The position numbers and the translations under genes were made by a program. Below, piece after piece: positions 10,998-59,600 of a stretch of 64,000 bases of DNA. How positions within the stretch are numbered: the stretch's first letter is position 1; every line of letters begins with the position of its first letter. The stretch comes from Chrysemys picta bellii. Its lineage: Eukaryota. Location: contig NC_088798.1 of assembly GCF_011386835.1 (NCBI RefSeq), positions 104,718,001 through 104,782,000 on the forward strand, in the 5' to 3' direction. The notes under the pieces were generated by a model. That model was not told where the DNA came from, searched no databases, and was given only the letters and a program-made list of their open reading frames with translations.

Positions 10998-11082
<85 letters not shown>

Positions 11083-14000
11083 CCTAGGTTCATATCCTGT
11101 TTGGGCCACAGCCATGTGTGTTTGTGAAGCTTTCTACTCGGTTAGAAAGCAGCTCTTGGGTGGCTCTTGTCCCCACGGCCTCTCAAATGCTGTAAGAGGG
11201 GGTGATAAACCTGGGCCTGAGCTGCAGAAGTCAGAGCTGAACTTTTCCAGTATGGGGTGTCTGCAACCAGGGCTTTGGGCTCCTTTCTAGCTGCCCAGAC
11301 ACATAGCAGAGCAATGAATAAACTACAAAAAGTGTGCTTAAAACTGAAGTCGGAGGGGCCAGGTTCTCGGCTGGTATAAATCAGCGTCGCTCCGATCTGA
11401 ACCAGCTAGGGATGCAGCCGGTGCCATGAAAAGCTCATTCTGACCCATCATTCTTCCTCCCAGTCACTGGCTGTGCCATAGTGATTGCCAGGGAAGTGAG
11501 CCGTCTCAATTCAGCGACACTTACCTTGGCATCCTGCTCCACCAGGTCCTCGCTCACGACATCGTCCTCCTCCCGCGTGCCCTGCATCAGAGACGAGAGG
11601 CCAGCGCCTCAGTCACAGAGGAATGAGGGCAGCGGACAGACAAGGGGGAATGGGGAGGGGCGGACGGATCAACGTACCTGAAGCAAAACAACGAGCATCT
11701 TCTTGAAGTGGCCCGAGGTGTCTCCCAGGACATCTGCCTCCAGCTCCCTCTCGTAGGCTGGAGCGTTGGAAAGGAAAATGGAAAGCACCTCAGCTCTGTA
11801 TTCAGGTTAGGCCGGAGCCCAACACAAGGCTCCCAGGATCCAGACCCCGGGTTCAAAGGACGTATGTGGAGCTGCTGTCCAGCATGCCACCCCTCTCTCA
11901 GATGCAATCAAAGCTGCACTGCCTTTCACAGCAAGCCCCAAACAAGCCAAACCCATTTCAGAGGCACTCCCCCCTGCCAACAACTCCCCTCGCCTCCACA
12001 GTCCCATCACCATAGTTTGACTTTTTTGGGGGCGGCTCCAGTCAAGCCAATGGCGCTGTGCATGGGAGGGGGGCAAATTCTGTGCCTGCCAACAGGGGCA
12101 CCATTTCAGGTTTTTTGGGGGGAAGGGACAACTTTAACCATGATTCCAGGAGCTACTTAGGCAACTGAAAACTCTATTTATTTTTGCAGTTAATAACTTA
12201 GAAATTCTCTGACAGGAGCACTGTATCTAATTCCTATATCAAGAAAGAAAATTAAGTAAATAGTAGACCCACTCAGCTCCAATACTAACATATTCTGACA
12301 TCTTGTGGGAAGTCACTTAAGGGACACTGGTTAGGTTTAAAATGGAAGTGTATATTCTTACTCAGCTACTCTTACTAAAGTCAGAAGGGACCATCGTGAT
12401 CATCTAGTCTGACCTCCTGCACGTCGCAGGCCACAGAACCTCACCCAGCCATTCCTGTGATAAACCCCTAACCTCTGGCTGAGTTACTGACTTCCTCCAA
12501 TCATGGTTTAAAGACTTCAAGTTCCAGAGAATTCACAGTTTAAATCTGCAAGTGACCCCCTGCCCCATGCTGCAGAGGAAGTGAAAAAACCACCAGGGTC
12601 TCTACCAATCTGACCCAGGGGAAAATTCCTTCCTCACCCCAAATCTGGTGATCAGATAGACCCCGAGCATGTGGGCAAAACCCACCAGGAAGATACCGAG
12701 ACAGAATTCTCTGTAGTAATTCAGAGCCCTCCCCAGCTAGTGTCCCGTCTCCAGCCGTTGGGGATTTTTGCTACAGGCAGTCACTGACAGGCCACACCAT
12801 TGTAGGCAGTCCTGTCATACCATCCCCTCCATACATTTATCAAGCTCAGTCTTGAAGCCAGTTAGGTTTTTTGCCCCCACTACTCCCCTTGGGAGGCTGC
12901 TCCAGAACTTCACTCCTCTGATGGATAGAAGCCTTCACCTAATTTCAAGCCTAAACTTGTTGATGGTCAGTTTATATCCATTTGTTCTTGAGTCCACATT
13001 GGTACTTAACTTAAATAACTCCTCTCCCTCCCTGGTATTTGTCGCTCTGAGGTATTTATAGAGAGCAATCCTATTTCCCCTCAGCCTTCTTTTGGTTAGG
13101 CTAAAAGGGTTCTCAAACTTCATCGCACCGCGACCCCCTTCTGACAAATTACTACACGACCCCAAGAGGGGGGACCGAAGTCTGAGCCCGCCTGAGCCCC
13201 ATCGTCCTAGGTGGGGGTGGGGGCAAAGCCAAAGGGCTTCAGTCCCAGGCAGGAGGCCTGTAACCTGAGCCCCGCTGCCCAGGGCTGAAAAGCCCTCAGG
13301 CTTTGGCTTCTGCCCTGCGTGAATGGAATCAGGCTTCAGCCCTGGCCCCCAAGTCTAAGCCAGCCATGGCGACCCCATTAAAACAGGGTCGCGACCCACT
13401 TTGGGGTCCCAACTCACAGTTTGAGAACCACTTAAACAATCCAAACTCTTTGAGTCTCCTCTCATAAGGTAGGTTTTCCATTCCTCTGATCATCCTAGTA
13501 GTCCTTCTCTGCACCTGTTCTAGACTGAATTCCTCTTTCTTAAACATGGGAGATCAGAACTGCACACAGCATTCCAGATGAGGTCTCACCAGTGCCTTAT
13601 ATAATGGTACTAACACTTCCCTGTTTCTACCTTGCCTGATGCACCCCAGGACTGTGTTAGCCTTTTTCACGGCCGCATCACATTGACAGCTCATAGTCAT
13701 CCTCCTGGGATCAACAAATACACTCAGGTCTTTCTCCTCCTCTGTCACTTCCAACTGATAAATCCCCATTTTATAGCAAAAATTCTCGTTAATCCCTAAA
13801 TGCATGACCTTGCACTTTGCACTATTAAATATCATCCCATTTCTATTACTCCAGTTTACAAGGTCATCCAGATCTTCTTGTATGATATTCCAGTTCTCCT
13901 CCATATTGGCAATACCTCCCAACTTTGTGTCATCTGCACATTTTATTAGCACACTTCCGCTTTTTGTGCCCAAGTCAGTAATAAAAATGTTGAATAAGAT

Positions 14001-17000
14001 TGGTCCCAAGACTGATCCCTGAGAACGCCACTAGTAACCTCCCTCCAGCCTGAGAGTTGACCTTTCAGCACGACCCATTGTAGTCTGCTCTTTAACCACT
14101 TCTTTATCCAACTTTCAGTTCTCCTATTAATCCCCGTTTTCTCCAATTTAACTAATAATTTCCTATGTGAAACTGTATCAAATGCCTTCCTAACATCCAC
14201 GCAGATTCGATCTACTGCATTTCCTTTGTCTAAAAATCAGTTCTCTTCTCAAAGAAAGATATTTCGCTTCTCTAACTCCAGCTGCCCAGCACCAATCAGA
14301 AAACTGAGTACAAAGGCAACAGCAACATTTGGGAAGTGCAAGGCCTTCTCCCACCCACGGGCGAGGATGCAGGCAGGTGCCCCCGAGAAGCATGCACAGA
14401 GTCTGGAGTGGAGGAGTCCATCTCAGGAGCAGCGGAGGGGGAAACACAGAGAAAGAGGCTATTGGGGGATATTCTAGTTCTGGTGAACCTGTGCCCCATC
14501 TGACTTAAATCCTCCCCTGCCCACAGGGCAGTGACTGCTGGCCTCCTGGCCCCAGAGAAGCCGGGACGCCCTTGTCCCCCATGCTAACCGTCTCTGTAGG
14601 CTTCCACCAGGTTGTGTATCTGCTGGTTGGTCCGGGATGCCAGGATCTCAATCAGGCATTTCTCGTCGGTGCCAATGCCCTGCAGGCAGGAAACACAACC
14701 ACCGCGTGAGATGTCACGTGCTGACGCCAGGTGGGTATCAGCCGAGAAGGGCAGCCTCTGGGGGACTGCGTCAGGGTGCGGGGTTAAGAACACCCGCCCT
14801 TAGAGGGGGCGGCCAGAGCTAGGCTATAGTACAGGTGACCCCTTTCACACAGCAAGCATCTGAGTGCGACCCCCCTTATCAACTAAAAACACTTTTTTAC
14901 ATATTTAACACTATTATAAATGCTGGAGGCAAAGCGGGGTTTGGGGTGGAAGCTGACAGCTCGTGACCCCTCACGTAATAACCTCGTGACCCTCTAAGGG
15001 TTCCCCACCCCCAGTTTGAGAACCCCTGGTGTAGCACATACTGTATTCTAGGATGGTCAGAGCGTGCCCTTTCCTCCCCCTTACCTGAAGGGCATCTTTA
15101 ATCTCCTTGGCATCAAAGTATGCCAGGGGCCGCATCAGACCCACAATCAGTCTCTCAAATTTCCCCGTCAGCTCCCGCTTCAGGTCTGCGATCAGGTCCT
15201 GGCCACCGGGCACAGAAGGGAGTACGAGGAGAGAGAGAGAGAGAAGGATCCATGAATGGCAGACTCTCTGGGAGAAAGGACTTATTAAGACAGCCTCCTT
15301 AGCTGTTTGGGAGGAGGTCATGACCTTCTCAGCAGGGCTGCTGGCAGAGTCCGGGCTGGCCATGGGTATCGGAAGGATTTTTCCCACCCTGCCATTAGCT
15401 AGTGAATTTTCCCAATGATTTTGCTTTGCTTTGTGGGCCCGTTGCCAGTCAGGCAGGGACAGGGAGAAGCAGGGGGCTGTACACCCTGCATGCTCTGGTT
15501 TGGAGGATGCAGCAAAGTCTCCCTCTCCTGCAGATCACAGAGCAGGATGTGTCACCGTCCGATTCTCTGGGGTTACCTTTCCGTAGAGCGATTTGTAGGC
15601 CTGGCTGATCTCGATTCTCTGCTTGTTGCTCCTGGACGTTATCAGGTCCAGTATGGCCTCCTTGTCACTGCCTGCAGGGAGACACGGTCAGTCACCCTCG
15701 TCCTACTGCCTAGATTTGGGTCTGCTCTAAGATCCAGCTTTGCCTGGACCAGAAGCGGATTCCAGCTCTGTGCTGGAGTTGGTAGGACAGAGAGCTGCGA
15801 CCAGGGCGCACCCATCCAGGGCTGGCCTACCTGGGACCAGGGTAATGGACTGATTGGTCTCAGGGACATCACTGGGGAAGGGGGGGCATAGCACGCTAGC
15901 ACAGGGAATGCCCCAATCACTCGTTCTCCCCGTGGGGATCCTGCACTGGGGCACCAGAGACTGTCCCAGGTCAGATCCGGACTGAAGCGCTGTGCCTTCT
16001 GCCTGCTTCTTCCCCCCACCAAGATAAGCCATGGGACATTTCCCATAGGAAGGCTGTTTGTGCATCATGAAGCCACTCCAGCACCCTACAAAAACAGACA
16101 GCAGTGCCCTGAAAACACATGCACTATGCGTCCTCGTTTACCAATTACATGGAGGCACAGGGAGGTGATGAAGCACCGGAGGGGGCAATACTGAAGGGCT
16201 AGGAGATGCTTTCATGGCCTTCTCCCCCTAATGCTCTCCCTTGCCATCAGAAAAGGGACAATCAGGGCATCCAGTGTCACCCCTCCATTCCGCTCCCACC
16301 CGGCCATGCCGCCCCAGAATGCCAGCACAAGGCCTGCTCCAAAGCCACTAACAACGGACACTGGACTGGGCCCATAGCGCGGCGGCAGTGGAAAGTACGC
16401 ACCGAACCCCTTCATAGCGTTGTACAGCGCCTCTGCATCCTGGCTCGCGTTGAAGTTCGGGAACTCCTTCACGGAGCCCCTGTACCTGCCAGCCTAGAGA
16501 GAGGAAACAAGAAAACAAATTGGGAAGCGCCAGCTGGAGGCTCCTCTCCACCGCCTGGCCAGAGCTGGCATGAGGTCATGCCTAGGGAGGTTTAGGTTGG
16601 ACATTAGGAAAAAGTTCCTAACTGTCAGGGTGGTTAAACACTGGAATAAATTGCCTAGGGAGGTTGTGGAATCTCCATCTCTGGAGATATTTAAGACTAG
16701 GTTAGATAAATGTCTATCAGGGATGGTCTAGACAGTATTTGGTCCTGCCATGAGGGCAGGGGACTGGACTCGATGACCTCTCGAGGTCCATTCCAGTCCT
16801 AGAATCTATGAATCTATGAGGGTGGCAATGTGAATGCGTGGGGCAAACCCAACATCTGATCCACCCAGCCACCGCTGAATTCCACCACTGGGCTTCTCAC
16901 CCAGCCTCCACAGGGGGCCCAGATCCACCAACAGCTGGGGGCATCCCAGACGAGTTACCTCCTTGTGCCCTGATGGAGCCTGGCCTTTGTTTCTGCTCCA

Positions 17001-36859: not shown

Positions 36860-37884
36860 GTGAGAAGGGGGCTGTGGGGAGGAGGGAGAAGCACATTGGG
36901 AAGAAGTTATTTTTGCTGAGTTTACCTCAGACTCCGTTCATGTTCCATAGGCCCAAACAAAGTTTCCTGAGCATCGATAAAGCCTTGGGTGAGCTTTAGT
37001 CCTTGTGAAAGTCAGAGATGGATAGAGCCATGCCTGCTTCCCCGCCCAGCCCCAACTCAGCTCAGCCAATGCACCCCCCCCGTCATGACCAGCAGCACCC
37101 CTGCTTTTCCAGTCCTGGGCCCCAGCAGAGCTCTGCCAACGCACCCCAATTGTGACCTCCTCCAACCCTATCTGAGCAAGGATCTGGAGTCAGGCCCATT
37201 CGTTTCACCAGATTACACGTAGGCCTGCTCCCTGGAGTGCAGGGGGGGCAAAAAACACAAGGGACAAATCTGTGGGGAAGCTGCATTTCTGGGCTGTCCT
37301 GGGCCCAGGCTCTGCCGCTGCTTCACACGCAGAGCTCCCATGAACATCAAGAGCAGGCTTTGGTGTGTGGGACGGCTACAGATCCAGCATGTGTGCCATT
37401 GTGCTAATAATGCAGGGACAAACCTTTGCCCTCGGGGGCAATGCTAGGCAGGGCTTACGATTCCAAGCGGGAGGAGACCTCCGGGTGCCATGTGGCCCTC
37501 GCTCCATCGTCCCACAGGGAATTAACCTGCAGCTCTCCAGCGAAGCTCAGAAACGGGGCTTCTCCAGCAAATATAGGTAAAAAGTCAACACTGAATATTT
37601 CCTCTGCCCACATGCAGCTCTAACCCTAACCCTAAATCTCCCCCGAACCATAGGGACACTCCACACCACATCCTGTCCCCCTTTAAGGCCCCGCAGCCCC
37701 CACGTCTAGTTAATATGTGCACCCATCTTCCAGGTTGCGGGGATGGCCTTCGTTCCACAAGTTTGCCCAGCATCCTGCAGAACTGTCCTATCATGGAGAG
37801 GCCACATGAGTCAGGGCTTAATTTGTAATGGCAAGAGAGGCCAGGGCTCAAGCAATTGTTTTACATTCATAACGGATACAGCAA

Positions 37885-38350: not shown

Positions 38351-39171
38351 CCTAGTCTTGCCACTGTCTCACTGAGTTTCCTTGGGCTAGTCAATTCATC
38401 TCCTAGTGCCTTGGCTTCCCCTGCTGTACAGTAGGGATGGTGCTTTGAGATCGGAGGATGAACAGTGCTGTGTAGGAGCTAAGTATTCTATTATTCCAGG
38501 CTGCTGGCCTGCACTGTGTTGAACTCTGTGACATGGTCTTGCGCTGCAACATTTACCCTTCAATGGCGTGTATCAAAGGCAATAGCTGAAGGGGAAGCAA
38601 ACCGCAGGATTCCAACAAGAAGCTCCCCTTCACCCACACTGCGCTATCACCATCGTCGGGGTAGATAGTACCCAGTGTCTTCCCTCGGGATTGGCACCCT
38701 GTTGTGCTAGGAGTTTGTTCAAACACTGGGGTAGAACTGGCCCCTTCCCCAAAGCGCTTTGCGTCTAACCACTCCACCTGCCCCATGCTCTCCACAGCGT
38801 AACTGGACTGGGCACCGCCTGGAAATGGAGGAGGTGGACACTGTTTTCTTTTTAAGCCTGGAGTGTGACTGCTGGAGCCAGGCGTTGAATAGCTCCATTC
38901 ACCACCTCCGAAGGAACCTGAATGCCTTCATGGCACGCGGGGGTGAAAGGAATTTTGTTTAACGAGTCGAAGAGTCAAGCCTTTGACTTGCTTTGAAATC
39001 TCTCCCCTTCATCTCCCGAGTTCCCCGGCCTCTCCATCCCCTCAGCGCCCCCTCCTCCCTCTCGGAGGGAACGGGAGAGTGTGGAATTGCTGCGGAGCTG
39101 TGAACAGTTGCAGCTGCTGCAGCCCCACTCCAGCAGCGCGGCTCCCTGGTTTGTGTCCGGCTTGCCCCAGC

Positions 39172-39226
39172 ATGAACTCCAAGGCCCTGGCTGTCCTGGG
39201 CTGCGGCCTTCTCCTCCTCCTCTTGG
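39172..39226 (+). CDS. PDGFRL-like exon 1 (signal peptide)
   Basis: 55 nt from ATG to strong donor G|GTAAGT; hydrophobic core LAVLGCGLLLLLL. Confidence 0.85.
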
Positions 39227-42200
39227 GTAAGTCTTGCTTTTCTGACTCTTTCCCTTCCTCCTACTCATTTCCCAAGCCCATACGTTTCCCTCCCCCTCCC
39301 TAGCTTGGTGCTCCTTGCATTCCTCAGTGGCCTACACCAGGATGCCTTGTTGGAGGGCAGGGCAGCATGCTGGAAAGGCATGGCATGAAGACAGTCCCTT
39401 ATTGCCTGCAACACCAGCAGGAACTCAGGGACTGTGGCTGTATAGGGACTTGCTTCTGCAGCTTTGGCCAGGCCGTGGTACTGGAACAACTTTGCCAATG
39501 GGCCCCAGCCCCAATTATTTTGGCTTGAGTGTCATCAAGGGAAAGATCCCAGGTTTTGCTGGCTTTGTGGGTCCGCATAAAAGGAAGCTGGATGAGTTTC
39601 CCTTCAGACATGCATCATGTACAGGAGCCATCTCTTCCCTGGCCAGAGAAGAAGGATACATAGGAGGGTGGTGAGTCAGATGGCTTGGCAGATTTGGGAG
39701 ATCCACATCTAAGTTAGGATGCCTGATCTCTTGCTCTCTGCCAGGTGCATCCCAGATGTCCTGGGCTTGGGTGCATGTGGGGATCACAGATAGGAGGCAA
39801 AAGCTACTTGCTACACAAATGCCTCCCAACAATCAATGAACAGAGAGCAGGCAAACCAGTGAGTGAACAGAGAGACCTCTTGTCTGCTCAGCTACGATAC
39901 TTTCACAGCATCTTCCTGTGCCAATACCCAGAAGCAGCTTAGAGTAGGAAGACAAGTAACCCTACTAGGAAAAGCCTTGTCTTATATGGCACAGGGATCC
40001 TGCCAGTCATGTCCTTTGCACGGTGAGTGGGTAAGAATTTCCTTGGTAAATAATGTTACCCTGCAAGAATTGCAGATTTCTGCCCTTTTGGGGATATGCC
40101 ATTTGGGACCCGATTTCCAGAACTTGTCTCTGGTTTTGAACCCGCGACTGATTATGGCCATTGTATCAGGCACACTCCCATTTTGAATACGCAAACAGCC
40201 TTTTGTGGATGTGAATTCCGGGATCCAAGAACCCAGGGCCAGATGCTCGGCTGGTGAAACGACACCGATGAACATCAGCTGAGGCGCTGGGCCGTATCCC
40301 AGTCAATGTGTGGTGGTAAACTGGTGCTGCCCCTCATTTTGTGGGCTCAGCTGCACACACAGAAATGGGGCATCTCATAACCGGACCCTTAGTGTGTCCA
40401 TGAAACCTGTGCTGTGGGTTAGGAGGGAGAATAAACATCCCGGCAGTGCCTGGGGCCTGACCTGGCCCTGTTGCTGAACAGCCTTTTGTAATTAAAGATC
40501 AGTGCAAGACCCTGCAAAGCCGCGCTGCGCCCTCTGCCCCTGTGGGCCTGTGTCTGCTGCTGCTCTGCTATCAAATGCGTCTTCTCTGTCCTCAGCTGAA
40601 TGTCAGGAGAAGGAAAAGCCCCCCAAAGCCACCGAGAAGAAGGTCACAAAAGAGCCCAAGCCAAACAAGCTCAAACCTCCCAAAGCAACAGGTGAAAAGC
40701 TCCATCAGGCAGCAGCCAAGCCCCCGAAGGGCAAAGCCGGAGTGAAACCCACGGCCCCTCCCAGCCAGGTGCACCCGCCTGCGTCCATCCTGACTCGGGT
40801 GGTGGCCAGGGGGCGGTTCCAGAAAGTGCCTGACTCCCTGACGCTGACGGCAGGCGACACCCTGGAGCTGCGCTGCAGAGGGCGGTCCGTCAGGTGGAGG
40901 TTCCCTGCGTACCTGGAGGACGAGGATGAGGGGCGGCTCAGGTGCGTGTCCGGGATGTGCAACGGGCTCTGGGAGGCTGTCCAGGCCCGGGGCCTGTCGT
41001 GGATGAGGGGTGAGCAGGGCCTGTGTGGGGTCCATTCCCCCGAGATGCCAAAGGCATCAAATGGCTTCAGTAAATGACATGCAGGAGGCTTGGATTTGGG
41101 GATGCCGGGCAGACCCTTGTTCTGGAGGCCAAGCACAGGTGAGGGCATGCAGCAGACGCGTTACCCTGGCGTGGACAATCGGAGCTCGTTTAACAGGCCC
41201 AAACACACAGACACCCCCTGCTCGCTCCGTGAGATCCACCAGGGAGCAAAGCTGGCAGGCGCTCAGGGATATAGAGCCCGAGTCTCACGTTCAGCTTGAG
41301 TCTGGCTGTGGCTTCCATTGCCCGTCCCACCTCTCACGCCCCACGGCCCTGGGCTGGGGGACAGTGCGAGCTACACAGCAGTTGGGAGCATGTTAAGAGA
41401 GGGGCTGTGCCAGGCACTATCCATCTCTCAGCATTTGGAGCACCCTGGCCACGTCTCCCGTTATTAACCATCTCCGGACTTCACCCCGCTGGGTGGGCAG
41501 GTAGGTCAGAGCGGGGGAGCTTGACACTCGGTGCCCACTGGGAATTGTTAGCGTGACCCTGTCATGCACGGTCTGTTCTTGGGCACAGGCTATGGGGGTA
41601 CAGGAAGCCCTTTGCCGGCCCCAGGCTGTCACGGTGGGCGTGGAGATAAGTGGGTGTTTTCCTGCCTCACGCAGTGCACAGTCAACCTGTGGAACTCATT
41701 GCCAGGGGATGTTGTGAAGGCCAAAACTATAACAGGGTTCAAAACAGAATTAGATACATTCTTAGAGGATCAGTCCATCAAGGGCTATTAGCCACGATGA
41801 CCAGGGATGCAACCCCCTGCTCTGGGTGGCCCTAGCCTCTGACTGCCAGAAGCTGGAAGTGGACGACCGGGGATGGATCACTTGATAACTGCCTGGTTCT
41901 GTTCATTTCCTCGGAAGCACCTGGCTTTGGCCATTATCAGAGACAGGACACTGGGCGAGATGGACCCTTGGTCTGACCCAGTCTGGCTGTTCTTATGTTC
42001 GACTGTTTGATGCAGAGGCCCAGGGTGACTCTCCTGGAGTCTGAGCAGGGCCCTCTCCCCTCTGTTTCAGAATCAAGCACTTTGAGAGGCACAGCCAGCT
42101 GCTGGTGGTGAACTCCAGGGCTGCTGACACGGGCGAGTACAGCTGCTGGTCCTTCCAGTGCCGGGACAGCGAGTGCCAGGACGGAGAGGACAGGACGGGC

Positions 42201-44773
42201 AAGGCTTTCATCTTCTTCACAGGTCAGGCTTCTGCGCTTAGACCGGTTTGGGGCAGGCAGGGGACATGAGCCAGAGAGCATCAGCATCTGCTCTCGTTAT
42301 CCAGCGGACAGGGAAGCCCCGGGTGAGGCCTGCTGCGGGCTAGGGCGTGTTACACAGGAGGCCGGCGCAGGTGGAGAGCCGGGAAGTGTCTCCCTGCCTC
42401 CAGTATGTAATCCCACTGCCCTCCTCCCTCCCCAGACCCCCAGGAGCTGTTCGTGCCGACGGAGGATTACTACGAAGTGGTCCAGCTGCGCACGAACCAC
42501 CCCACGCTCCTACCATGCCAGGTGACCAGCCCTCTGGCCAAGGTGACGCTGCACCGCGAATTCCCCCCCGAGGAGGTGGCCGTGGACGGGATCGACATCT
42601 CGTATGACGTGAAGAGGGGGTTCGTGATCCACCGCCCGCGGCCCTCGTATGCAGGGTCACTCTTCTGCATGGCCAGCCTGGACGGCATGCGGCAGATATC
42701 CACCAAGTACATGCTGATCTACATCAACTGTGAGTGACCGTTGCCTGGCAGGGATGGGAGATCCAGGTGGGAGAACACCTATGTGTTCCTTTGGTTTTGA
42801 GACCTCCACCTGCCTGCTTGCTGACATCCGCTGCCTTTACCCGAGCCAGCTCCACCCTTGTCAGCTCAGGAACGGCGCTAGCTAGCCAGAAACGCTCCAC
42901 CACACTAGCAGTGGGGACAGGAATGGGGACACAGAATTCCACCTGCCTTCCTAAGACAGAGCAGGAGGAATTAGCCCACGAGGCTGTGTATCGTTGCGGC
43001 CTTCTCACTGTCACTAGCGTTTCTGGGCACTGCTGCGCTCATACAGACCTGCTTATGCAGAGCAGACCCTCTGCCAGCTGAGCTATCCGGACATGTTAAC
43101 TGAGCGCCCCTGGTCACCTGCACTGGTCTGTAATTATCGAGGACCATACACATGCTGACGTACCATTCGTCAGCCCGCCAGATGAACACACGCCATCCAG
43201 CACAAGGAGATGGTAGGTTGCTACATTGACAGAGGTCTCTAAGCAGAAGCAGAGACCCCTTTAGCTGCTGGAGATACCTGTTAGCAGGCCTGTCCCTCCC
43301 TTAACCCAGCCCTAAAGCCCAGAAGGGTTGGCAGGGAGGTGGTGAGCTGATGGACGCTCAGCGCTACGGCTCCCTGAACTGCCATTGGTTGACTAGCCCA
43401 TCTCCTACGATCGGGAAGTGGCTAACCCATGGTACTTTGCCGCCCTTCCTAATCCTGCTTCTCACCACTTCACTCTTGACCTCGCAGACCCGTCCTCTGC
43501 TCCCAAACCCACAGTCAGCGCCTCAGCCGCCACTGTGCGGGCTGGAGAAAACTTCAACGTGACATGCACGGTTTTTGGAGAACCAGAAGTCGCGGTCGAT
43601 TTCACCTGGGAGTATCCGGGGCAGCAGGTAGGGAAGCGAGGTGGCTGGGTGGGAAGGGGGTTGTTAGCCTGATAATACCGAATGGCTCCAACCAAGATCA
43701 GGGTCCCATTGCGCCAGGCATTGTACCTACAAAGAGTAAGAGGCAGTCCTGGCCCCCCAGGGCTTACAGTCTAGACAGAGAAAGTGTGTGTGGGGGGAAT
43801 AAAGGCAAAAGAGGGAGGATGAGTTGCCCCAGGTCACACAGCAGGTCAGAGCCAGAAACAGAACCGAGTTCTCCTGACTCCCAGACCATGGTGCCTCCCC
43901 ATCTATAAGGGCACAGAGAGAAGAATGGGGCTTGTGCTGCACACAACTTTCCTTTCAGGGGCTTCTCCTCTGCAGCTGACCAGAGGCATTTTCCCCACAG
44001 GAAACAGCACAAAGGGCTGATGTGACCTTTGCAGAAGCACGGTTCACTCAGCACACCAGGGCCAACGAAACAGAACTGAACGGACATGGGCTGGGGCCTC
44101 CAGAATGATGGGCAGCTCCAGTGAAACCAATGACTGTGGGCGGGGGGGGGGGGGGGGGAGATGGCGGGGGGGCGGGAAATTGGGCTTCATCGGAAATGCA
44201 CACGGCGCCCTTTTCATGGAGTGGGAGGTAGTAGGTGGGGCCGCCATGCAGACCAGGTGTGAAGCTGAGGTCCCTTCTGCCCATCTCTGGTGACACTTTA
44301 CGGGGGAGATACCAGGAGCCCGTGGTGCTCCGTGCATGGAACAGGGGATGTCCGGGGGGTTGGCTAATATGCCCCCTCTTGCTACAGCAGATGCCAGTGA
44401 CCAGGGCTAGGCGTGAAGGGCTGTTGAGCATCGGATGAGCCCTTCCTTTGCCTCCAGCCCTGCACTTACCAGCCCCTAGCTCTGCAAGTGCTGCAGGCTG
44501 CCTAGGAAGGGACAGGAGCTCTCCAACCCCCATTCCGCGCTTGCTTTTCAGATTGGCAGGCCCCCCTACAGCCGCGAACGCGCCGACCTAGTGCGCCGAG
44601 GCGGGCAGGTGCAGCAGGAGTCCGAGAGCATCCTCTATGTGGACGAGGCACGCGCCATAGATGAGGGGCTTTACTCCTGCAGTGCCATGAACCTACAGGG
44701 CACCACCACCGTCTCCACCCGGATCCAGGTACTTCCAGCCACCCCGGCCCCGAGGGGGACCCGGTCTGGATAG
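39172..44773 (+). CDS. Platelet-derived growth factor receptor-like protein paralog (secreted, 3 Ig domains, 402 aa), complete gene
   Basis: Join: 39172-39226, 40596-40941, 42071-42222, 42436-42729, 43488-43627, 44552-44773. This is 1209 nt, open, all GT-AG, intron phases 1,2,1,1,0. It has a signal peptide MNSKALAVLGCGLLLLLL and PDGFRL hallmarks GRFQK, LELRC, YPAY-like FPAYL, ADTGEYSCW, KVTLHREFP, YDVKRGF, CTVFGEP and NLQGTTTV. No transmembrane or kinase exons; AATAAA at 44823. The ortholog symbol PDGFRL is withheld because synteny indicates a paralog. Confidence 0.93.
40596..40941 (+). CDS. PDGFRL-like exon 2 (Lys/Pro-rich stalk + start of Ig1)
   Basis: 346 nt, AECQEKEKPPK...SILTRVVARGRFQKVPDSLTLTAGDTLELRCRGRSVRWRFPAYLEDEDEGRL. 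Confidence 0.93.
41652..42000 (+). mobile_element. CR1 3' fragment (second subfamily) in PDGFRL-like intron 2
   Basis: CACAGTCAACCTGTGGAACTCATTGCCAGGGGATGTTGTGAAGGCCAAAACTATAACAGGGTTCAAAA...TTCTTATGTTC tail. Confidence 0.85.
42071..42222 (+). CDS. PDGFRL-like exon 3
   Basis: 152 nt, RIKHFERHSQLLVVNSRAADTGEYSCWSFQCRDSECQDGEDRTGKAFIFFT. Confidence 0.95.
42436..42729 (+). CDS. PDGFRL-like exon 4 (Ig2)
   Basis: 294 nt, DPQELFVPTEDYYEVVQLRTNHPTLLPCQVTSPLAKVTLHREFP...RQISTKYMLIYIN. Confidence 0.95.
43488..43627 (+). CDS. PDGFRL-like exon 5 (Ig3 N-half)
   Basis: 140 nt, YPSSAPKPTVSASAATVRAGENFNVTCTVFGEPEVAVDFTWEYPGQQ. Confidence 0.95.
44552..44773 (+). CDS. PDGFRL-like exon 6 (Ig3 C-half, stop)
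   Basis: 222 nt, IGRPPYSRERADLVRRGGQVQQESESILYVDEARAIDEGLYSCSAMNLQGTTTVSTRIQVLPATPAPRGTRSG*. Confidence 0.93.
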   Translation: MGRPPYSRERADLVRRGGQVQQESESILYVDEARAIDEGLYSCSAMNLQGTTTVSTRIQVLPATPAPRGTRSG

Positions 44774-44822
44774 CCAGGCCGTGCTACAGACAGGGAAGTC
44801 AGCGATGGCAACGCATAGAAGT

Positions 44823-44828
44823 AATAAA
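44823..44828 (+). terminator. Putative polyadenylation signal of the PDGFRL-like gene
   Basis: AATAAA 50 nt after the TAG stop. Confidence 0.5.
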
Positions 44829-45561
44829 AGGACCAGAGATCTCTTTGTGAGACAGGGACCAAATTTGCTTCCATTCTCCCGCCTCCCCTTCATGGGATTT
44901 ATTTACTCATTAAACTGACCAGCTTCTTCAAAGAGGAGAGACTTTGTTTTGTCCACAGGGTGCACTGAGGGGAGGCGAGAGGCTGCCCCAGGTGAGTCTG
45001 GGTCAACCCTGAGCAAGCAGAGCATTTCACTAGGATCCGAGACGGGAAACCAGTCCCTCTGTGCCACAGAGCCTTGCTGCCAACGTGCCCCAGAGCGGCA
45101 CATTGCTGGCTGGCAGGTTCTCTCACTGCTTCTGCTCTCTTGAGCTCTCAACACTACACCATGGGGAGCAGGGCCCAGGGTAGCAGAACCACGTCAGCTG
45201 GGTCACAGCTGCTGGGAAAGAAACTAGATCTGGGCAAAGCTCTCCGAGGGGAAGAGAGAGATGGAAGGTCGAAGCTGTTACGGTCCAATCCAAGTGGGGT
45301 CTGAACTTCTGCCAGGTTTAGGCCCACTTGGGCCTGGGATTCTGCCCAGGGCTCATTGCACATCGAGGGGTCAACAGCAATGTTCAGAACTGTGGGCTCC
45401 ACCTATCCCACAGCTCAGGGCTGGTTGGATCCAGGATTTGGGGTCCGGCCCAGCTCTAGTTCACGGTAGCAGATGGTTGTATCATTTTAGTCACCCGTGT
45501 ACCGTGTGCGATGACATACGTGCGTGGGTGTGCAGCGTATGGGAGCCTGCCGGGGCATATG

Positions 45562-53526: not shown

Positions 53527-53695
53527 CTACGTGGCGATGAGTGGCACCTCGCTGGAGGGGATGGGGAAGGTGGGGGAGGAGTCACCGTTCAGGACCCTGT
53601 ATAGCAGCTCTTCCTTCTCCCGGTGCGCCTGCTCCCGCAGCTGGGACTCCTTGTCCAGGGCCTCCCGAACCACCAGGAGCTTGTCAGACAGTTGC
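53527..53695 (-). CDS. CCDC69: CCDC69 exon 9 (terminal coding part)
   Basis: RQLSDKLLVVREALDKESQLREQAHREKEELLYRVLNGDSSPTFPIPSSEVPLIAT*. Confidence 0.94.
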
Positions 53696-56600
53696 CTGCA
53701 AAGAAACAGCAGGTGATGAAGCGGGCAGGGGACTGGACTCGATGACCTCTCGAGGTCCCTTCCAGTCCTAGAATCTATGAATCTATGAGCTGAAGTGGTA
53801 AGAACCCCGGAGTGAGATAAAGACGGGGATCAGGGCCCCGCCAGCCGTTCTGATCACTGCCAAAAGAGGCCAGGGCAGGGGGGGCATGGAATGGTCTTGA
53901 AAAGGGGTGGGGTGGATTATAGGCACTCCCAAAGCCAGTTAGGTACTGTGCCAAGTCACGGTCTTCCTCACACATACACACTCTCACCAGAGCCAGACTG
54001 GTGCTGTGCAAGGTCATGGTCTCTCTCCCTCTTCCACACCCCCCGAGCCGGATGGGTGCTAGGCAAGCCCACGTTCGTACATGTTCACCTGAACCAGACC
54101 AGTGCTCTGCAAAGTCACACACCCACAGGGGGCCTGGCTTGTGCACCTCAGCCCCTACTATCATAGCTCTACTCAGCTATCGCCCTCTGACCTGCAGCTT
54201 CTGTGCTAGCTTTGATGCCATGATCACACCTGCCGTTTGGGTCCTGTCCCCGCATCTAGTTATCAGCCTATAATTCAGAAAACAGCCTGTCCTGAGTGCA
54301 AGTCAAACCTAGCCCAGAGCTCAGCCCGTGAGCGCCGACGCTGGCAGCAGGTAGCTTGTTCTGCACTAGGCTGCGGATGTTACCTTGTCATTGTCAAGTG
54401 GTTCTGTGTCTGAACGTGCAGATCCTCGTTCTCCTGCTGAAGGGTTTTCACTTTCTCCTCCAGAAGCAGGTTCCTCTCCATCTGTGACATCCCAGAAGGG
54501 TTTGGGAAGGGAGGATTCAAAGGAGAGGTCAAGGGTCAGAAGTGACATGGATTTGGCAACAGACGATCCCCTACGCTGGTTAATGAGGTCCTGCCTAAGC
54601 GCCAACGTCAAAACGTTGGTGGTTACTGACAAAAGTTGCCTCTATGCGAGTTTAGTGATGCATAGCAGCAACCTGCTGTGTATGCCAGCAAGCACCCAGC
54701 TCCAATTAGTGCAGTCCTCCATCTGCTGGCTTCCCCCACTGGGTCTGCGCCCGACACGTTAGCTCGGCTGAGAGGCCAGCCAGGACAGAAAGCTGCCCCT
54801 AGGCAGCAGGTGAGCCAGAGGGGAATGCGCCTGGAGAACGCGGTTTGCATTCAGGTAGGTGGAACGCTCTCCTGCGAGCTGTGCTTTTCCATCTCCGCTA
54901 TTGCTGCCCCTGGAAAGGAGTCCATGCACTTTTTGGTAGAACCACATCAAACCCACCACTGTTTCCAAGTTCAGCAGCTTCTTGTCCAGGTCATGGATGC
55001 GTTCGTTCTTCATCTCTATGACAAAATGCAGACTCTCCAGTTCTTGCTCCCAGAAGTGGCTGGGGCTCCCATAATCCTAGAAGGGGAGAAAGAAAACGCA
55101 TGAGTCCCCCACTGACTGGAGAGGTTGGAGGGGCTAATGCATGGTTCTGGTTTGGTTCTTTATTCCTGAACGGAGATGAGCCAAGATGACGACCGTTAGG
55201 AGTCATAATTGTCCAGTGTTCTCAGTCCTGGAATGATAGGATTCTTACCCCATAAAATGTGCTTACTAGTGTTCATCCATACCCTACAGTTTTACGGCAT
55301 TTGCACTAGGCACCTGAGTGCAAGGAGCTTGAACTACCTGCATAATGCACATAATGTGTACCCTTAATTTTCTTATGATCTACTTCCTATCCCTTTGCTT
55401 ACTTCAACCATACTACAGGTTTACCAGGCACTACGAACACTGCCCTCTCCAGATCCAGTGATGGGGAGTCTTCCAGGGAGGCCTCTATTAAGCTTTTATT
55501 TTGGTGACAAAGCATTTATAGCATACAGATGCTTCTATGACTAAGTTTGAGCTGTCCATTGCCACAACTGCGAATCCAACAGGCTTGCTCGGAGACCCCG
55601 GCAAATGACGGGTTAAAGCAATACCTTCCCAAGAGGCCACAGTTTGTTTGTTTTCCTGCACCTGAATATGTTTCTTATAGTCTCTGCTCAAGATCGATTC
55701 CTCCACCCGTTTCATTTTCTCCTGGAAGGATTTCAGCTGGGAATTTAACCTGTCAATCGTCTCCTAGGGCAGAAGAGAAAGGAAGAGGGATGTGATTATG
55801 AGTCCTGTTTTATGACCTCCCCTCCAGCAGGGGCACTGTTTATATAAGGGAAGAAAATTACCTATTGCATTGTACAGAGGAGGCAGGAGTCAAACTGCAA
55901 GACATTTCACAATGAATAACAAAGTCCCATGTAGCAGTTCCCTAATACAGTATTTAATGGCAGCAGGGAGCAATTCCCACTATAATGCCTTCTGCCATCC
56001 TGGCTTCCCTGGTTACAATGGGTCAGTCGGTAACCACGGGAGAGATCTCTTTATAATTAGCACTTCCTGGGTTGCTTGCATAAGAACAGACTCCCGGACT
56101 CTGCCAAGTCTGCTCTGAGTCACAGTATGGCAGTTAGGCGGCTTGTTCGCACCAGTTTCACTTCTGGAGTGTTCCGGTTACAGACTTGCCTGCCAGTAGA
56201 GATGTGCCCTAACCAGAACCTAAGCTCTGAGCACCATTAACAACATGGAGACATTCCAAACACAACCCACCTGTCCCCTATGTCAATAGTGGTGTGATGG
56301 GGTGTCTGCCCCATACCAGCATGCAAGGGGTTAATAGAGCTCTAGAGAGGCTACGCAGGAAGCAGCCAATAGGAGAGGGACTGGAAGCAGCAGACAATCA
56401 GGCTGCAGGCCAGAGCAGGGTCAGTGACTCCCTGGAACTCAAGGAGGGAGGACTGGGTGCCTTGCAGGTGGAGGGAAGCTAGCACCCTGGACAGAGCAGG
56501 GCAGGAACAGGGGAGCCAGAGGGAGCACCTGGCTGGCTGCTAGGACTGGCATGCTGTGGCGAGGGTGAAGAAGGTGCTGGAGCTGTGGGGAACTCTGCAC

Positions 56601-59600
56601 TTTTTTGATTGAGCCAGTGAAGGACTGTTTTCTGTTTTGGAATGTAAAGCCCAGGTGGCCATTTTGATTTAAATATCTATTTGACTGCTGCAAAATTAAG
56701 GCAAGATCACTTTGTGAGAGGCCCCTCTGGGCTCATTCCCACAAACAGCCAGCCTGGGTTACTCCAAGGGTGGTGGGCTCCGGGCAGCACAAACAACCTT
56801 TGTTTTCTCAATTTGGCTCTTGTGAAAGTGAGGGGCCGACTGTGCTGTTTTACCCCCGGGATAGTTCAGGCAGGTCCCTTGCAAGCTTCTCCCAGCACCC
56901 TCAGACCTGTGCGCTGAATCTAAAGAGCTCTGCTCCACGGGGAATTGCTCAGCAAGCCAAAGCAAGGGGGCCAGCACCTGTAAGGAAGACTGGGCCGTTT
57001 GGTAGGATTCCCTTAAGAGCAGCATCTCCTGGTCATGGGCCCTCTGGACTTCTGCAGGGAAAACATAAAATCAGTGTCAGAATCAGGAGACAGGAAAGCA
57101 AGCCCTGCCCAAGCCCCTTACCCGCATAGAATGGCAGTAGATGGCACTGCCATAAAGGGGGGACCCGAGTTACTCTGGGCTAAGAGTCAGCAGAGGCTTG
57201 GGACTGTAAGCAGAGGAAATGCCGTTTTCTGGGGCAGCCTTGCAGTTGGGAGCTCCCTGGAGGACTCGCTCAGCTAAAGTCACAGGGCTGCTAGCTGCGT
57301 GATTGCTACGCTAAGGAGAGAGGCAATATGTCGCCCGTAGCGAGAGGAGAAAGAGAGGGAATGACCCCATCACCAGTCACAGCCGTACTGCTGAGACTGG
57401 GTGACCACATCTCGCATGGTTGGCTGCAGTGTAAACGCTCCCAGCTCCCAGAGAAGCATCCTGCTCCGATGGAAGGAGTCTCCTTTTTGAAGAATTTTAG
57501 GTTTATTTCAGAGGCACTGGCAGTGTAATACCCCAGTGGGGTCAATTTTCCAGACCTTAGGTTGGGTTTCTACAAACGCTCCATGCTAGTTAATGAAATA
57601 CAGAGTAATATCTCCTGCCAGCATTTCTCCATGCCCCTCCCAGGGTCCTCTCCCTCATGGCTTGGAGAGGTGCAGACAAGATAACAGTAAGGGAGCACCA
57701 CGGCAGCCCTGAGAGCATGACAGGTGACAGTATGGTAATCCAGAGGGCATGGGAGGTGCTTGCCAATGGGGTCAGTCAAAGAGCGGGCAGATCTCTTGGC
57801 AGGGCCGTCCCTAGCTATTCTGGGGCCCTACTCAGCCCACTCGCGGGGGTGGGTGGGGCCCCAGGCCTCGGGGGGGGGGGGGGGAAGAGGCTGGTCCCAG
57901 GCCTCGGGGGGGGGGCGGGGCTGGCTGGAACCACCCCCCAGCGGCACGGCTGGGGTCGGGTCGCTGCACTTCCTGCCGCCGGTGAGTGCAGGCCCAGCCC
58001 TGCTGCAGTCCTCAGGGGAGTGGGGGCAGAGCAGGGGCGGGAAGAGGCGGGGCTGGGGCGGGAAGGGGCGGGGCAGGGTTGGGGTGGAACAGGGGTGGGA
58101 AGAGGCAGGGCAGGGAAGAGGCAGGGCTGGGGCGGAGCAGGGGCTGGAGCAGCTCCCAACTGCGCAGGGCACCAGGAAATGTGGTGCCCCAAATTCCCTG
58201 GTGCCCTACGCAGCTGCGTACTTTGCGTCTGGGTAAGGATGGCCCTGTCTCTTGAACACACAACATCTAATGAAAATGCTGAATATTCATTACAGGAGCG
58301 ATCGGCCTCTGCTCAAGAGAGCCAAGGAGGTTGGAGAGGAGAAGACATGCAAGAGCAGCCCTGTGAGAAGTTTAAACCCTAGCGGTGGGGGCGTAGCGGG
58401 AAGCCAGCGCCCAGCAAAGGAGAGACTGGGGCCTTACCTCGGAGGTTCTCTTCATGCTCTCTGTTCAGTGTGTCGAACTGCTTGGAGAGCTGCTTGTTAA
58501 GCTCTAAATCTCTTTCCTTTTCCACCTAGAAACAAAGTGAGCAACAAGCCCTAAGTATCCGGGGATCTCAGAGAAATAAGTGTACCTGCCTGTGCAATCT
58601 CTTATTTATCTCCTGGGCGGCAGATCCAGTTTCCTGTTCCTATTTTCATGAATGAATTTAACTGTGGTGCTTATGACAGTGAGGGGTTAATATCACTGGC
58701 AACCATATACACTGGGGGAAGGGGAAAGAGCATCACACACAGCTCTGCTAGGACAGCTGACCTACGACTCCCTGGACTTTTCCAGGATTTCCTAGACAAC
58801 TGCCCTTTTTGCTGAGCTCTGCGAGATCAGTAAAAGGGGGACAAGGAGTGAACCACTGAGCTCAGTTTCGCTCACGACGAAGGCCATGATTTTGGCGTGT
58901 AAATTTCACAACAGAGTGCAGGGGAAAAAACAAGTCAGAGAAGGGGGAGAGCTCACCTTGCAGCAGCAGCTGTGATGTCCTGGGCCTAGACACAGCTTCC
59001 TGGCACTGTGAGCTGGGGAATGGGTCACAGCACCTCTCAGGCTGGGTCTGTCCGCCCCTCCGTAGGTGGAGCCGGAGGGGCCAAACCTGAATAGCGCTGC
59101 GACCCCGGTGCACCAGGTCACATGTGTTTTTACAGCCATTTCTGAGATTTCACGGACTTTATTCAAATTCACGATTTTCGTGAACTCCATGACAAAACTG
59201 TATCCTTACTTGTGGCCTTAGGTGTCTAGAAGTGGAAATCTGAGGACACTAACCTACAATACTGAGTCTGCTAACCCTGGGGAAGGCAGATCGGTGCTAT
59301 AACTGGGGGAGCAGGCCAGCTGGCTCTGAATGCGAGATCAGGGCCGGAAGGGGAATGTCAAAGCCTCCTAGCTGACCACCCAAAGGATCTCACGCTGTCT
59401 GGTGTCTTTGGAGACTATCAGGTCATCAAGGTCCTGCTATATACTACTCCCTAGCTCTGAACCTGTGGGAGTGGTGCAGTGTGAAGGTCAGGAAGCAGAA
59501 GCATGAATGCCCAGGACTGGGGTGACTGCGCTGGGACACTAGACAGACACTCTTGGGGTGGGGAAGCCACTTTGATCCAACCTGGATTTTAACGTCTTGG

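What the first reader, a model, noticed from the sequence alone, without database searches (positions are those of the whole stretch)
39172..44773. Intact, apparently uncharacterised second PDGFRL-type secreted Ig protein ('PDGFRL2')
Seen in sequence: six exons with open frame, canonical splice sites, signal peptide, three Ig domains with paired cysteines, an N-glycosylation sequon (NVT) and a polyA signal. Exon sizes 55/152/294/140 equal those I recall for human PDGFRL, but the residues are highly diverged, so this is an old paralog rather than the ortholog. With no transmembrane or kinase region it should be secreted. It may act as a ligand decoy or matrix protein (inference). A gene retained in reptiles and lost in mammals would be a useful comparative target.
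Basis: partly seen in the sequence, partly recalled or inferred. Interest (0 to 1): 0.85.

Follow-up and report, generated by a model that had tools for sequence, protein, structure and literature searches.

The report
Expressed turtle PDGFRL2, an old PDGFRL paralog
This is a real, transcribed turtle gene for a secreted three-Ig-domain protein, the ancient duplicate of PDGFRL; databases already predict it in many vertebrates under PDGFRL's name, it survives in some mammals, and its function has never been studied.

Summary
Six GT/AG-bounded exons at 39172-44773 (+) give a 402-aa open frame. It has a signal peptide, a disordered Lys/Pro-rich linker, three Ig domains and no membrane anchor. Spliced RNA contigs from independent studies remove all five introns exactly as predicted. 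Turtle dN/dS is 0.15-0.30, and about 0.1-0.19 in Ig2 and Ig3.

The "old paralog" reading is right. The protein is 42% identical to human PDGFRL but 95% identical to a Mauremys protein. It falls in a separate clade (99/99 support) that runs from sharks to mammals. Turtles also carry the canonical PDGFRL, next to MTUS1. This gene lies between ANXA6 and CCDC69. In gar the block is SLC7A-type / this gene / CCDC69, a duplicate of the SLC7A2-PDGFRL-MTUS1 block.

Two claims need correcting:
- It is not lost in mammals. Monotremes, marsupials, bats, felids, sloth, hedgehog, elephant and elephant shrew have predicted copies; no primate or rodent protein was found.
- It is not unannotated. It is auto-named "PDGFR-like protein" in dozens of genomes, and a human symbol PDGFRL2P exists.

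Function is untested. The fold matches the D1-D3 ligand-binding module of VEGFR-1, PDGFR, CSF-1R and KIT, so a soluble growth-factor binder or decoy is the best inference.

The parts
39033..39171 (+). 5' UTR (minimum extent)
   Evidence: Spliced RNA contig X10 record 9 begins at 39033 and X9 record 18 at 39131.
39172..39226 (+). Exon 1 coding part: start codon and signal peptide (residues 1-18, plus 1 nt of codon 19)
   Evidence: The 39226/40596 junction is seen in X3, X9 and X10.
40596..40941 (+). Exon 2: Lys/Pro-rich disordered linker (residues about 20-85) and the first half of Ig1
   Evidence: The linker has 15 K+R against 6 D+E, and 13 Pro in 66 aa. pLDDT is below 50 for residues 21-80 of the ortholog model. 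Junctions confirmed.
42071..42222 (+). Exon 3 (152 nt): second half of Ig1, with C159, C164 and C169
42436..42729 (+). Exon 4 (294 nt): the whole Ig2 domain, VEGFR-1-like and the most conserved domain
   Evidence: PF21339 at 3e-16. VEGFR-1 D2 at 1.6e-8. dN/dS 0.10-0.16. 51 of 99 positions are at least 90% conserved across the clade.
43488..43627 (+). Exon 5 (140 nt): first half of Ig3, with C309 and the NVT sequon at N306
44552..44773 (+). Exon 6 coding part: second half of Ig3 (C372), short Pro-rich tail, stop TAG at 44771-44773
44774..44912 (+). 3' UTR (minimum extent), with AATAAA at 44823 and ATTAAA at 44909
   Evidence: RNA contigs reach 44880 (X10) and 44912 (X9). Signals located.
53554..57061 (-). 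Downstream neighbour, tail-to-tail: 3' exons of CCDC69 (53554-53697, 54374-54499, 54954-55088, 55659-55763, 56975-57061)
   Evidence: These exons are collinear with the 294-aa MTUS1_CCDC69-domain gene next to the cat ortholog, at 45-86% identity by tblastx (about 60-86% for the four 3'-most exons, 45% for the fifth). The MTUS1 tail reaches only 36%. Mauremys, Pelodiscus, Emydura, Carettochelys, gar and kiwi have the same neighbour.
36636..36863 (+). Lone AG/GT-flanked exon of a cationic amino-acid transporter (SLC7A/CAT type): apparent relic of the upstream gene of the duplicated block
   Evidence: It is 70% identical to the turbot gene and 74% to the gar gene, both 614-617 aa AA_permease genes lying just upstream of the ortholog. 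No other exon was found in 17-39 kb with the turbot gene, nor anywhere in the window with the gar gene.
7935..16490 (-). Upstream neighbour, head-to-head: ANXA6 exons (residues about 236-268 at about 7935-8033; residues about 8-38 at about 16398-16490)
   Evidence: The best PDB hits are annexin VI, at 3.5e-12 and 1e-13.

Best explanation
The locus is the turtle ortholog of the second PDGFRL-type gene of jawed vertebrates, 'PDGFRL2'. It is an ohnolog-type duplicate of PDGFRL, and it arose as part of a three-gene block: SLC7A-type transporter / PDGFRL-type / MTUS1-CCDC69-type.

Shown: it is intact, transcribed, spliced as predicted and under purifying selection. It encodes a 402-aa protein made of a signal peptide, a disordered basic Lys/Pro-rich linker and three Ig domains. 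The predicted fold of those domains matches the D1-D3 ligand-binding module of class III/V receptor tyrosine kinases (VEGFR-1, PDGFR alpha/beta, CSF-1R, KIT). There is no D4-D7, transmembrane or kinase part.

Inferred (about 35-40% for this specific mechanism): it is secreted and binds a dimeric growth factor of the PDGF/VEGF or SCF/CSF-1 type through Ig2-Ig3. Because it cannot signal, it would act as a soluble trap or modulator. It may be tethered to matrix or heparan sulfate through the basic linker.
For: - Gene model and open frame.
- RNA: all five junctions in contigs from three studies, two of them full length.
- Selection: pairwise dN/dS among five turtles is 0.15-0.30. Ig2 is 0.10-0.16, Ig3 0.11-0.19 and the linker 0.6-0.96.
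- Orthology: 95% identity to the Mauremys 402-aa protein and 62-68% to monotreme, marsupial, bat and felid proteins, but 42% to the human PDGFRL cluster.
- Phylogeny: the type-2 clade has 99/99 support, follows the species tree from sharks to mammals, and places the window's protein sister to Mauremys.
- Both genes in one species: Pelodiscus, Pelusios, Varanus, Sarcophilus, Loxodonta, Rhynchocyon, Apteryx, Ambystoma, Rhinatrema, Erpetoichthys, Megalops and Anguilla.
- Synteny: type-2 lies next to CCDC69 in cat, four turtles, gar and kiwi. Canonical PDGFRL lies next to the 1336-aa MTUS1 in Eretmochelys. A SLC7A-type gene lies upstream of type-2 in gar and turbot. The window has ANXA6, a SLC7A relic and CCDC69.
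- Exon sizes 152/294/140 are shared by both paralogs.
- Fold: AF2 model of the 95%-identical ortholog has pLDDT 81.7. The best PDB matches are VEGFR-1 D1-6 (2e-21), PDGFR alpha/beta D1-3, CSF-1R D1-3 and KIT D1-3, with TM by target up to 0.70.
- No TM segment.
- Ig2 is the most conserved domain, and 5 of the 8 clade-diagnostic residues lie in it.
Against: - No binding partner was tested or predicted, so the decoy mechanism rests only on homology to receptor ligand-binding modules. Even canonical PDGFRL has no established ligand in the literature I could search.
- In the VEGFR-1 D2 alignment I did not systematically assess VEGF-contact positions.
- Secretion and signal-peptide cleavage are inferred, not shown.
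- The RNA runs are coded contigs, so neither tissue nor expression level is known.
- The whole-genome-duplication origin of the block is inferred from paralogous neighbours, not dated.
- Human chromosome positions for ANXA6, CCDC69 and SLC7A2-PDGFRL-MTUS1 are from my own knowledge.
Confidence: 0.85

Rival explanations
1. It is simply the canonical PDGFRL ortholog (the human 8p22 gene), fast-evolving in turtles.
For: It carries the same automatic name in databases, the same Pfam architecture, and the same 55/152/294/140 exon sizes.
Against: - It is only 42% identical to the human PDGFRL cluster, whereas the true turtle orthologs are 71-73% identical to human.
- It forms a separate clade at 99/99.
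- Pelodiscus and Pelusios have both genes.
- The canonical turtle gene spans 48.5 kb next to MTUS1. This one spans 5.6 kb between ANXA6 and CCDC69.
Confidence: 0.01
2. It is a decaying or non-functional duplicate: an open frame kept by chance and not expressed as a proper mRNA.
For: The gene has been lost or is unannotated in many placental orders and most birds, and a human pseudogene symbol exists. The neighbouring SLC7A-type gene has decayed to one exon in turtles.
Against: - Full-length, correctly spliced transcripts are present in several studies.
- dN/dS is 0.15-0.30 overall and about 0.1-0.19 in Ig2 and Ig3 across turtles that include both cryptodires and a pleurodire.
- All structural cysteines and the exon structure are conserved from sharks to mammals.
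Confidence: 0.03
3. It is a matrix or adhesion protein, or itself a ligand for a cell-surface receptor, rather than a growth-factor trap. The Ig module would mediate protein-protein contacts unrelated to PDGF/VEGF-type ligands, and the basic linker would anchor it in matrix.
For: - No ligand is known even for canonical PDGFRL.
- The Lys/Pro-rich linker has a net charge of about +9 and is disordered.
- Lower-ranked fold matches include adhesion molecules such as contactins and DIPs.
Against: The top 30 fold matches are all RTK D1-D3 or D2-D3 ligand-binding modules. The strongest sequence matches are to VEGFR-1 and VEGFR-2 D2, the principal VEGF-binding domain. The strongest constraint is on Ig2.
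Confidence: 0.3
4. It is the 5' part of a longer receptor gene whose TM and kinase exons lie further downstream.
For: Its homology is to RTK ectodomains.
Against: - There is a stop codon in exon 6 followed by polyA signals.
- The RNA contigs end 107-139 nt after the stop.
- The next gene, 9 kb downstream, is CCDC69 on the opposite strand.
- Full-length predicted orthologs are about 380-415 aa.
Confidence: 0.01

Closest known systems
PDGFRL (PRLTS; human NP_006198, 375 aa), the canonical paralog
   Same: Both have a signal peptide, a basic linker and three Ig domains (PF22854 / PF21339 / I-set), with no TM or kinase. Both have six coding exons with identical 152/294/140-nt middle exons. Both lie tail-to-tail with an MTUS1/CCDC69-family gene and downstream of a SLC7A-type gene.
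   Different: - Identity is only 42%, and the two fall in separate clades that split before the shark/bony-vertebrate divergence.
- The neighbour is CCDC69, not MTUS1, and ANXA6 lies upstream.
- The gene is compact (5.6 kb against 48.5 kb in turtles).
- The linker and C-terminal tail are longer (402 against 374 aa).
- Eight clade-diagnostic residues separate them, five of them in Ig2.
Database 'platelet-derived growth factor receptor-like protein' entries of the second type (e.g. Mauremys mutica and M. reevesii 402 aa; Panthera uncia 396 aa; Lepisosteus 397 aa), and the human symbol PDGFRL2P
   Same: They are orthologs. Identity to Mauremys is 95%, the exon structure is identical, the CCDC69 neighbour is the same, and they fall in the same clade.
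   Different: Only the species differs. These entries are automatic predictions that share their name with canonical PDGFRL. That PDGFRL2P is the human relic of this gene is my inference from the symbol; I could not read its locus.
Soluble VEGFR-1 (sFlt-1) and the D1-D3 ligand-binding modules of VEGFR-1/2, PDGFR alpha/beta, CSF-1R and KIT
   Same: The predicted three-domain fold matches (Foldseek 2e-21 to 1e-16, TM by target up to 0.70). Ig2 matches VEGFR-1 D2 by sequence. sFlt-1 is a precedent for a secreted receptor fragment that traps ligand.
   Different: This is a dedicated gene, not a splice or cleavage product of a receptor gene. It has only three domains, with 19-30% identity to these modules. 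Ligand binding has not been shown.

Membership tests
PDGFRL-type secreted proteins (both paralogs) | N-terminal signal peptide and no transmembrane segment or kinase domain | tested here: met
   The only hydrophobic stretch is at residues 1-23; the maximum elsewhere is 0.55. The model has a helix at residues 3-21. The stop is in exon 6 and the RNA ends soon after. Cleavage and secretion themselves were not tested.
PDGFRL-type secreted proteins (both paralogs) | Three Ig domains of the VEGFR/PDGFR D1-D3 type with conserved cysteine pairs | tested here: met
   PF21339 matches exon 4. PF22854, PF21339 and I-set are on record for the orthologs. C112, C212, C262, C309 and C372 are invariant, and C159 is at least 90% conserved. 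The fold matches RTK D1-D3.
PDGFRL-type secreted proteins (both paralogs) | Shared exon structure (middle exons of 152, 294 and 140 nt) | tested here: met
   The window, four other turtles, cat and turbot type-2 genes, and the Eretmochelys canonical gene, all have 152/294/140.
Canonical PDGFRL orthogroup (human 8p22 gene) | Groups with human PDGFRL in a tree; about 70% identity for sauropsid orthologs | tested here: not met
   Identity to the human cluster is 42%. It lies outside the canonical group, in a clade with 99/99 support.
Canonical PDGFRL orthogroup (human 8p22 gene) | Tail-to-tail neighbour is MTUS1 | tested here: not met
   The neighbour matches the roughly 300-aa CCDC69-type gene at 45-86% identity, and the MTUS1 tail at only 36%. 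Canonical turtle PDGFRL does have the 1336-aa MTUS1 as neighbour.
PDGFRL2 orthogroup (second paralog) | Member of the shark-to-mammal type-2 clade | tested here: met
   It is sister to Mauremys inside the turtles, within the type-2 clade at 99/99.
PDGFRL2 orthogroup (second paralog) | Conserved position upstream of, and tail-to-tail with, CCDC69 | tested here: met
   This holds for the window, cat, four turtles, gar and kiwi.
Class III/V receptor tyrosine kinases | Five to seven Ig domains, a transmembrane helix and a split kinase domain | tested here: not met
   The protein has three Ig domains only, no TM, and a stop after Ig3.
Soluble growth-factor traps (functional class, e.g. sFlt-1) | Binds a growth factor and blocks its receptor | not testable with these tools
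This needs binding assays.

The most novel reading that the evidence does not exclude
PDGFRL2 is a dedicated soluble binder of a PDGF/VEGF-family (or SCF/CSF-1-type) ligand, with a specificity distinct from PDGFRL. It has been conserved for more than 400 million years, yet was independently discarded in primates, rodents and most birds. If so, a whole layer of growth-factor regulation would be missing from the standard model mammals and would have gone unstudied. Because both paralogs carry one name in databases, some data labelled 'pdgfrl' in non-model vertebrates may also be assigned to the wrong gene.
Probability: 0.3. Interest if true: 0.6.

Novelty: already known. Interest (0 to 1): 0.38.

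Why it matters
This is an expressed and constrained secreted relative of the VEGFR/PDGFR ligand-binding module. It appears to be absent as a protein-coding gene from human and mouse, which may be why it has no functional literature. It can be studied in cat, bat, opossum, turtle, frog, gar and probably zebrafish.

There is also a practical annotation point. Two ancient paralogs share the single name 'platelet-derived growth factor receptor-like protein', so orthology-based transfer of PDGFRL data between species can hit the wrong gene.

The locus is also a clean example of a duplicated three-gene block (SLC7A / PDGFRL / MTUS1-CCDC69) with differential decay. In turtles the transporter copy is reduced to one exon.

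Tried and rejected
- Full-length protein as a query: the spliced 402-aa protein has no single reference. I searched with exon pieces and then worked from database orthologs. The fold is that of the 95%-identical Mauremys protein, not of the window's own sequence.
- Pfam on the downstream coiled-coil ORFs and on the annexin ORFs gave nothing useful. Their identity came from PDB hits and from the neighbour genes of orthologous loci.
- The search of earlier findings 'near' returned nothing.
- Literature: 'PDGFRL' with 'paralog' or 'ohnolog' gave no paper on a second gene. The title and abstract survey of PDGFRL showed only biomarker-type studies.
- PDGFRL2P: the symbol occurs once, in a human TCGA gene list. 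That passage lies beyond the text held, and no supplement was held, so I could not confirm its locus.
- SLC7A-like gene: a tblastx search with the turbot gene over 17-39 kb, and with the gar gene over the whole window, found only the one exon.
- Rejected readings: canonical PDGFRL ortholog, pseudogene, and truncated receptor gene (see rivals).
- Zebrafish: which paralog 'pdgfrl' refers to could not be settled. Cyprinids have both types.
Full report
**Observation**

The exons are 39172-39226, 40596-40941, 42071-42222, 42436-42729, 43488-43627 and 44552-44773 on the + strand. All introns are GT..AG. The spliced frame is 1209 nt, giving 402 aa with a single terminal TAG. The exon sizes are 55/346/152/294/140/222.

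The only strongly hydrophobic stretch is at residues 1-23, the signal peptide. Nothing later reaches TM-like hydrophobicity. Residues 20-85 are Lys/Pro-rich, with 15 K+R against 6 D+E and 13 Pro. Cysteines lie at 112/159 (plus 164/169), 212/262 and 309/372. There is one NVT sequon, at N306. AATAAA lies at 44823 and ATTAAA at 44909.

Exon 4 on its own is a complete Ig domain. It matches Pfam PF21339 (VEGFR-1-like Ig) at 3e-16 and VEGFR-1 D2 in the PDB at 1.6e-8. PDGFR-beta reaches only 0.24. Exons 5 and 6 carry the two halves of an I-set/Ig_3 domain.

**Expression**

Public runs hold the stretch with word shares of 0.17-0.38, roughly the exonic fraction. I laid four of them, from four studies. 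This gave two full-length spliced contigs, X10 (1475 nt, 39033-44880) and X9 (1389 nt, 39131-44912), plus pieces in X3. Once the tool's stated cut offsets are applied, all five predicted introns are removed at exactly the predicted GT..AG sites.

These are contigs, so they show that the spliced mRNA exists. They do not show its level or tissue. One low-depth contig in X3 joins exon 1 directly to exon 5. That would be an in-frame skip of 792 nt, and it is unverified.

**What it is**

A search of 1.84 billion representatives with exon 4 gave two tiers of hits, at 62-90% and 43-54% identity. Three further steps resolved them: full-length searches from a lungfish hit, from human PDGFRL and from a snow-leopard hit, a cluster look-up, and local BLAST.

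- The window's protein is 95% identical to a 402-aa Mauremys protein and 92-94% to Chrysemys, Terrapene and Chelonia.
- It is 82-87% identical to Pelodiscus, Emydura and Carettochelys, and 62-68% to echidna, marsupial, bat, felid and elephant proteins.
- It is only 42% identical to the cluster that contains human PDGFRL (NP_006198).
- True canonical PDGFRL orthologs, 374-375 aa and 71-73% identical to human, exist in the turtles Eretmochelys, Pelodiscus and Pelusios.
- Many species carry both genes.

An IQ-TREE analysis of 59 rows puts the window's protein sister to Mauremys. It sits inside a type-2 clade with 99/99 support that follows the species tree from sharks and rays through ray-finned fishes, lungfish, amphibians, sauropsids and mammals. 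The canonical sequences lie outside that clade, and a lamprey protein is equidistant from both. The duplication therefore predates the divergence of cartilaginous and bony vertebrates.

**Synteny**

Upstream in the window, on the - strand, are ANXA6 exons. The PDB best hits are annexin VI residues 8-38 at about 16.4 kb and residues 236-268 at about 8 kb.

Downstream, tail-to-tail, are coiled-coil exons at 53.5-57 kb. They are collinear with, and 45-86% identical to, the 294-aa MTUS1_CCDC69-domain gene beside the cat ortholog. They match the MTUS1 tail at only 36%. The same roughly 300-aa neighbour flanks the ortholog in Mauremys, Pelodiscus, Emydura, Carettochelys, gar and kiwi.

By contrast, the canonical Eretmochelys PDGFRL is a 48.5-kb gene lying tail-to-tail with the 1336-aa MTUS1.

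In gar the arrangement is SLC7A-type transporter (617 aa, +), then this gene (+), then CCDC69-type (-). Turbot has the transporter as well. From my own knowledge of the human map, this mirrors SLC7A2-PDGFRL-MTUS1 at 8p22, while ANXA6 and CCDC69 are adjacent at 5q33.

In the window the transporter survives only as a single AG/GT-flanked exon at 36636-36863. It is 70-74% identical to the fish genes.

An earlier first-stage note on this same stretch (s1-335632) proposed the same duplicated block, and my tests agree with it.

The middle exons of 152/294/140 nt are identical in both paralogs.

**Constraint**

I mapped the exact database proteins onto four other turtle loci and computed pairwise dN/dS.

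| Region | dN/dS |
|---|---|
| Whole CDS, NG86 | 0.20-0.30 |
| Whole CDS, YN00 | 0.15-0.21 |
| Ig2 | 0.10-0.16 |
| Ig3 | 0.11-0.19 |
| Ig1 | 0.26-0.60 |
| Signal peptide plus linker | 0.63-0.96 |

Across the whole clade, Ig2 is the most conserved domain, with 51 of 99 positions at least 90% conserved. Five of the eight residues that are fixed differently between the two paralogs lie in Ig2.

**Structure and likely mechanism**

I modelled the Mauremys ortholog with AF2 on a 59-sequence alignment. Mean pLDDT is 81.7, and 248 residues are at 90 or above. Residues 21-80 are disordered, and three beta-sandwich domains follow.

Foldseek against the PDB returns the ligand-binding modules of receptor tyrosine kinases as its top 30 hits:
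- VEGFR-1 D1-6 with VEGF-A (2e-21);
- PDGFR-alpha and PDGFR-beta D1-3;
- CSF-1R D1-3;
- KIT D1-3;
- VEGFR-2 D2-3.

TM scores normalised by target reach 0.63-0.74.

Shown: the protein is an isolated D1-D3-like module with a signal peptide and no anchor or kinase.

Inferred: it is secreted and binds a dimeric growth factor through Ig2-Ig3. Unable to signal, it would act as a trap or modulator. The basic disordered linker may hold it on matrix or heparan sulfate.

I put about 35-40% on this specific mechanism and about 30% on a matrix, adhesion or ligand role unrelated to those factors. No ligand is established even for canonical PDGFRL in the literature I could search.

The gene is not lost in mammals as a whole. 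Full-length predictions exist in the following groups:
- echidna and platypus;
- opossum, Tasmanian devil, bilby and wombat;
- at least nine bat genera;
- four felids;
- Choloepus, Erinaceus, Rhynchocyon and Loxodonta.

All placental hits rank above the marsupial ones. None is from a primate, rodent, lagomorph, artiodactyl, perissodactyl or canid, so the losses look lineage-specific. This is an absence of annotated proteins, not proof of gene loss. Among birds only kiwi appeared.

The gene is also not unannotated. It is in NCBI and UniProt for dozens of species, under the same automatic name as PDGFRL. The symbol PDGFRL2P occurs in a human TCGA gene list. By naming convention that implies a recognised human pseudogene of a 'PDGFRL2'. 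I could not read the passage or confirm the locus.

I found no paper that treats this gene functionally or describes the two-paralog history.

**Verdict**

It is the turtle member of an already predicted orthogroup, so its novelty as an object is low.

What remains open, and moderately interesting, is its function, its repeated loss (including apparently in human and mouse), and the naming confusion between the two paralogs.

Noticed in passing
window 36636-36863 (+): A single well-preserved exon of a cationic amino-acid transporter (SLC7A/CAT type). It is AG/GT-flanked and 70-74% identical to the intact gene that precedes the ortholog in turbot and gar. No other exon was detectable. In Mauremys the same roughly 700-bp segment (window 36513-37203) is 92% identical but inverted. 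It was not found within 10 kb upstream in Pelodiscus, Emydura or Carettochelys. It is probably a relic of the lost third gene of the duplicated block. Kiwi has a 423-aa prediction without Pfam hits that shares this exon.
   Followed up: partly
window 37885-38352: A 31-bp minisatellite of 15 copies (92% matches), about 0.7-1.1 kb upstream of the mRNA start. G-rich 14-45-bp repeat arrays lie at 36000-36430. The Mauremys locus has only about 190 bp (roughly six units) aligning to this array.
   Followed up: no
window 41600-42000 (intron 2): RNA-contig depth is very high here (thousands-fold in X1 and X3), with many loose ends at 41675-41686 and 41998-42000. This marks an interspersed repeat, transcribed from many genomic copies and not part of this gene's mRNA. 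From memory it looks like a CR1-type LINE 3' end.
   Followed up: no
window 39225 -> 43487 joint (run X3): One low-depth contig joins exon 1 directly to exon 5. Skipping 792 nt keeps the frame and would encode a signal peptide followed by Ig3 only. It is a single contig at depth 2, so it may be an assembly artefact or a rare isoform.
   Followed up: no
window 13557-14236 (-): A reverse-transcriptase fragment (PF00078, 6.5e-8) inside an ANXA6 intron, probably a LINE remnant.
   Followed up: no
window about 7.9-16.5 kb (-) and 53.5-59.8 kb (-): The flanking genes are ANXA6 (5' part, promoter region about 17-18 kb with GC 0.61) and CCDC69. A further coiled-coil ORF at 59447-59758 is probably an upstream CCDC69 exon; it was not matched to an ortholog here.
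   Followed up: partly
L004 (Eretmochelys) versus the window: The two paralogs differ about ninefold in gene size in turtles (48.5 kb canonical against 5.6 kb here) despite identical middle-exon sizes.
   Followed up: no
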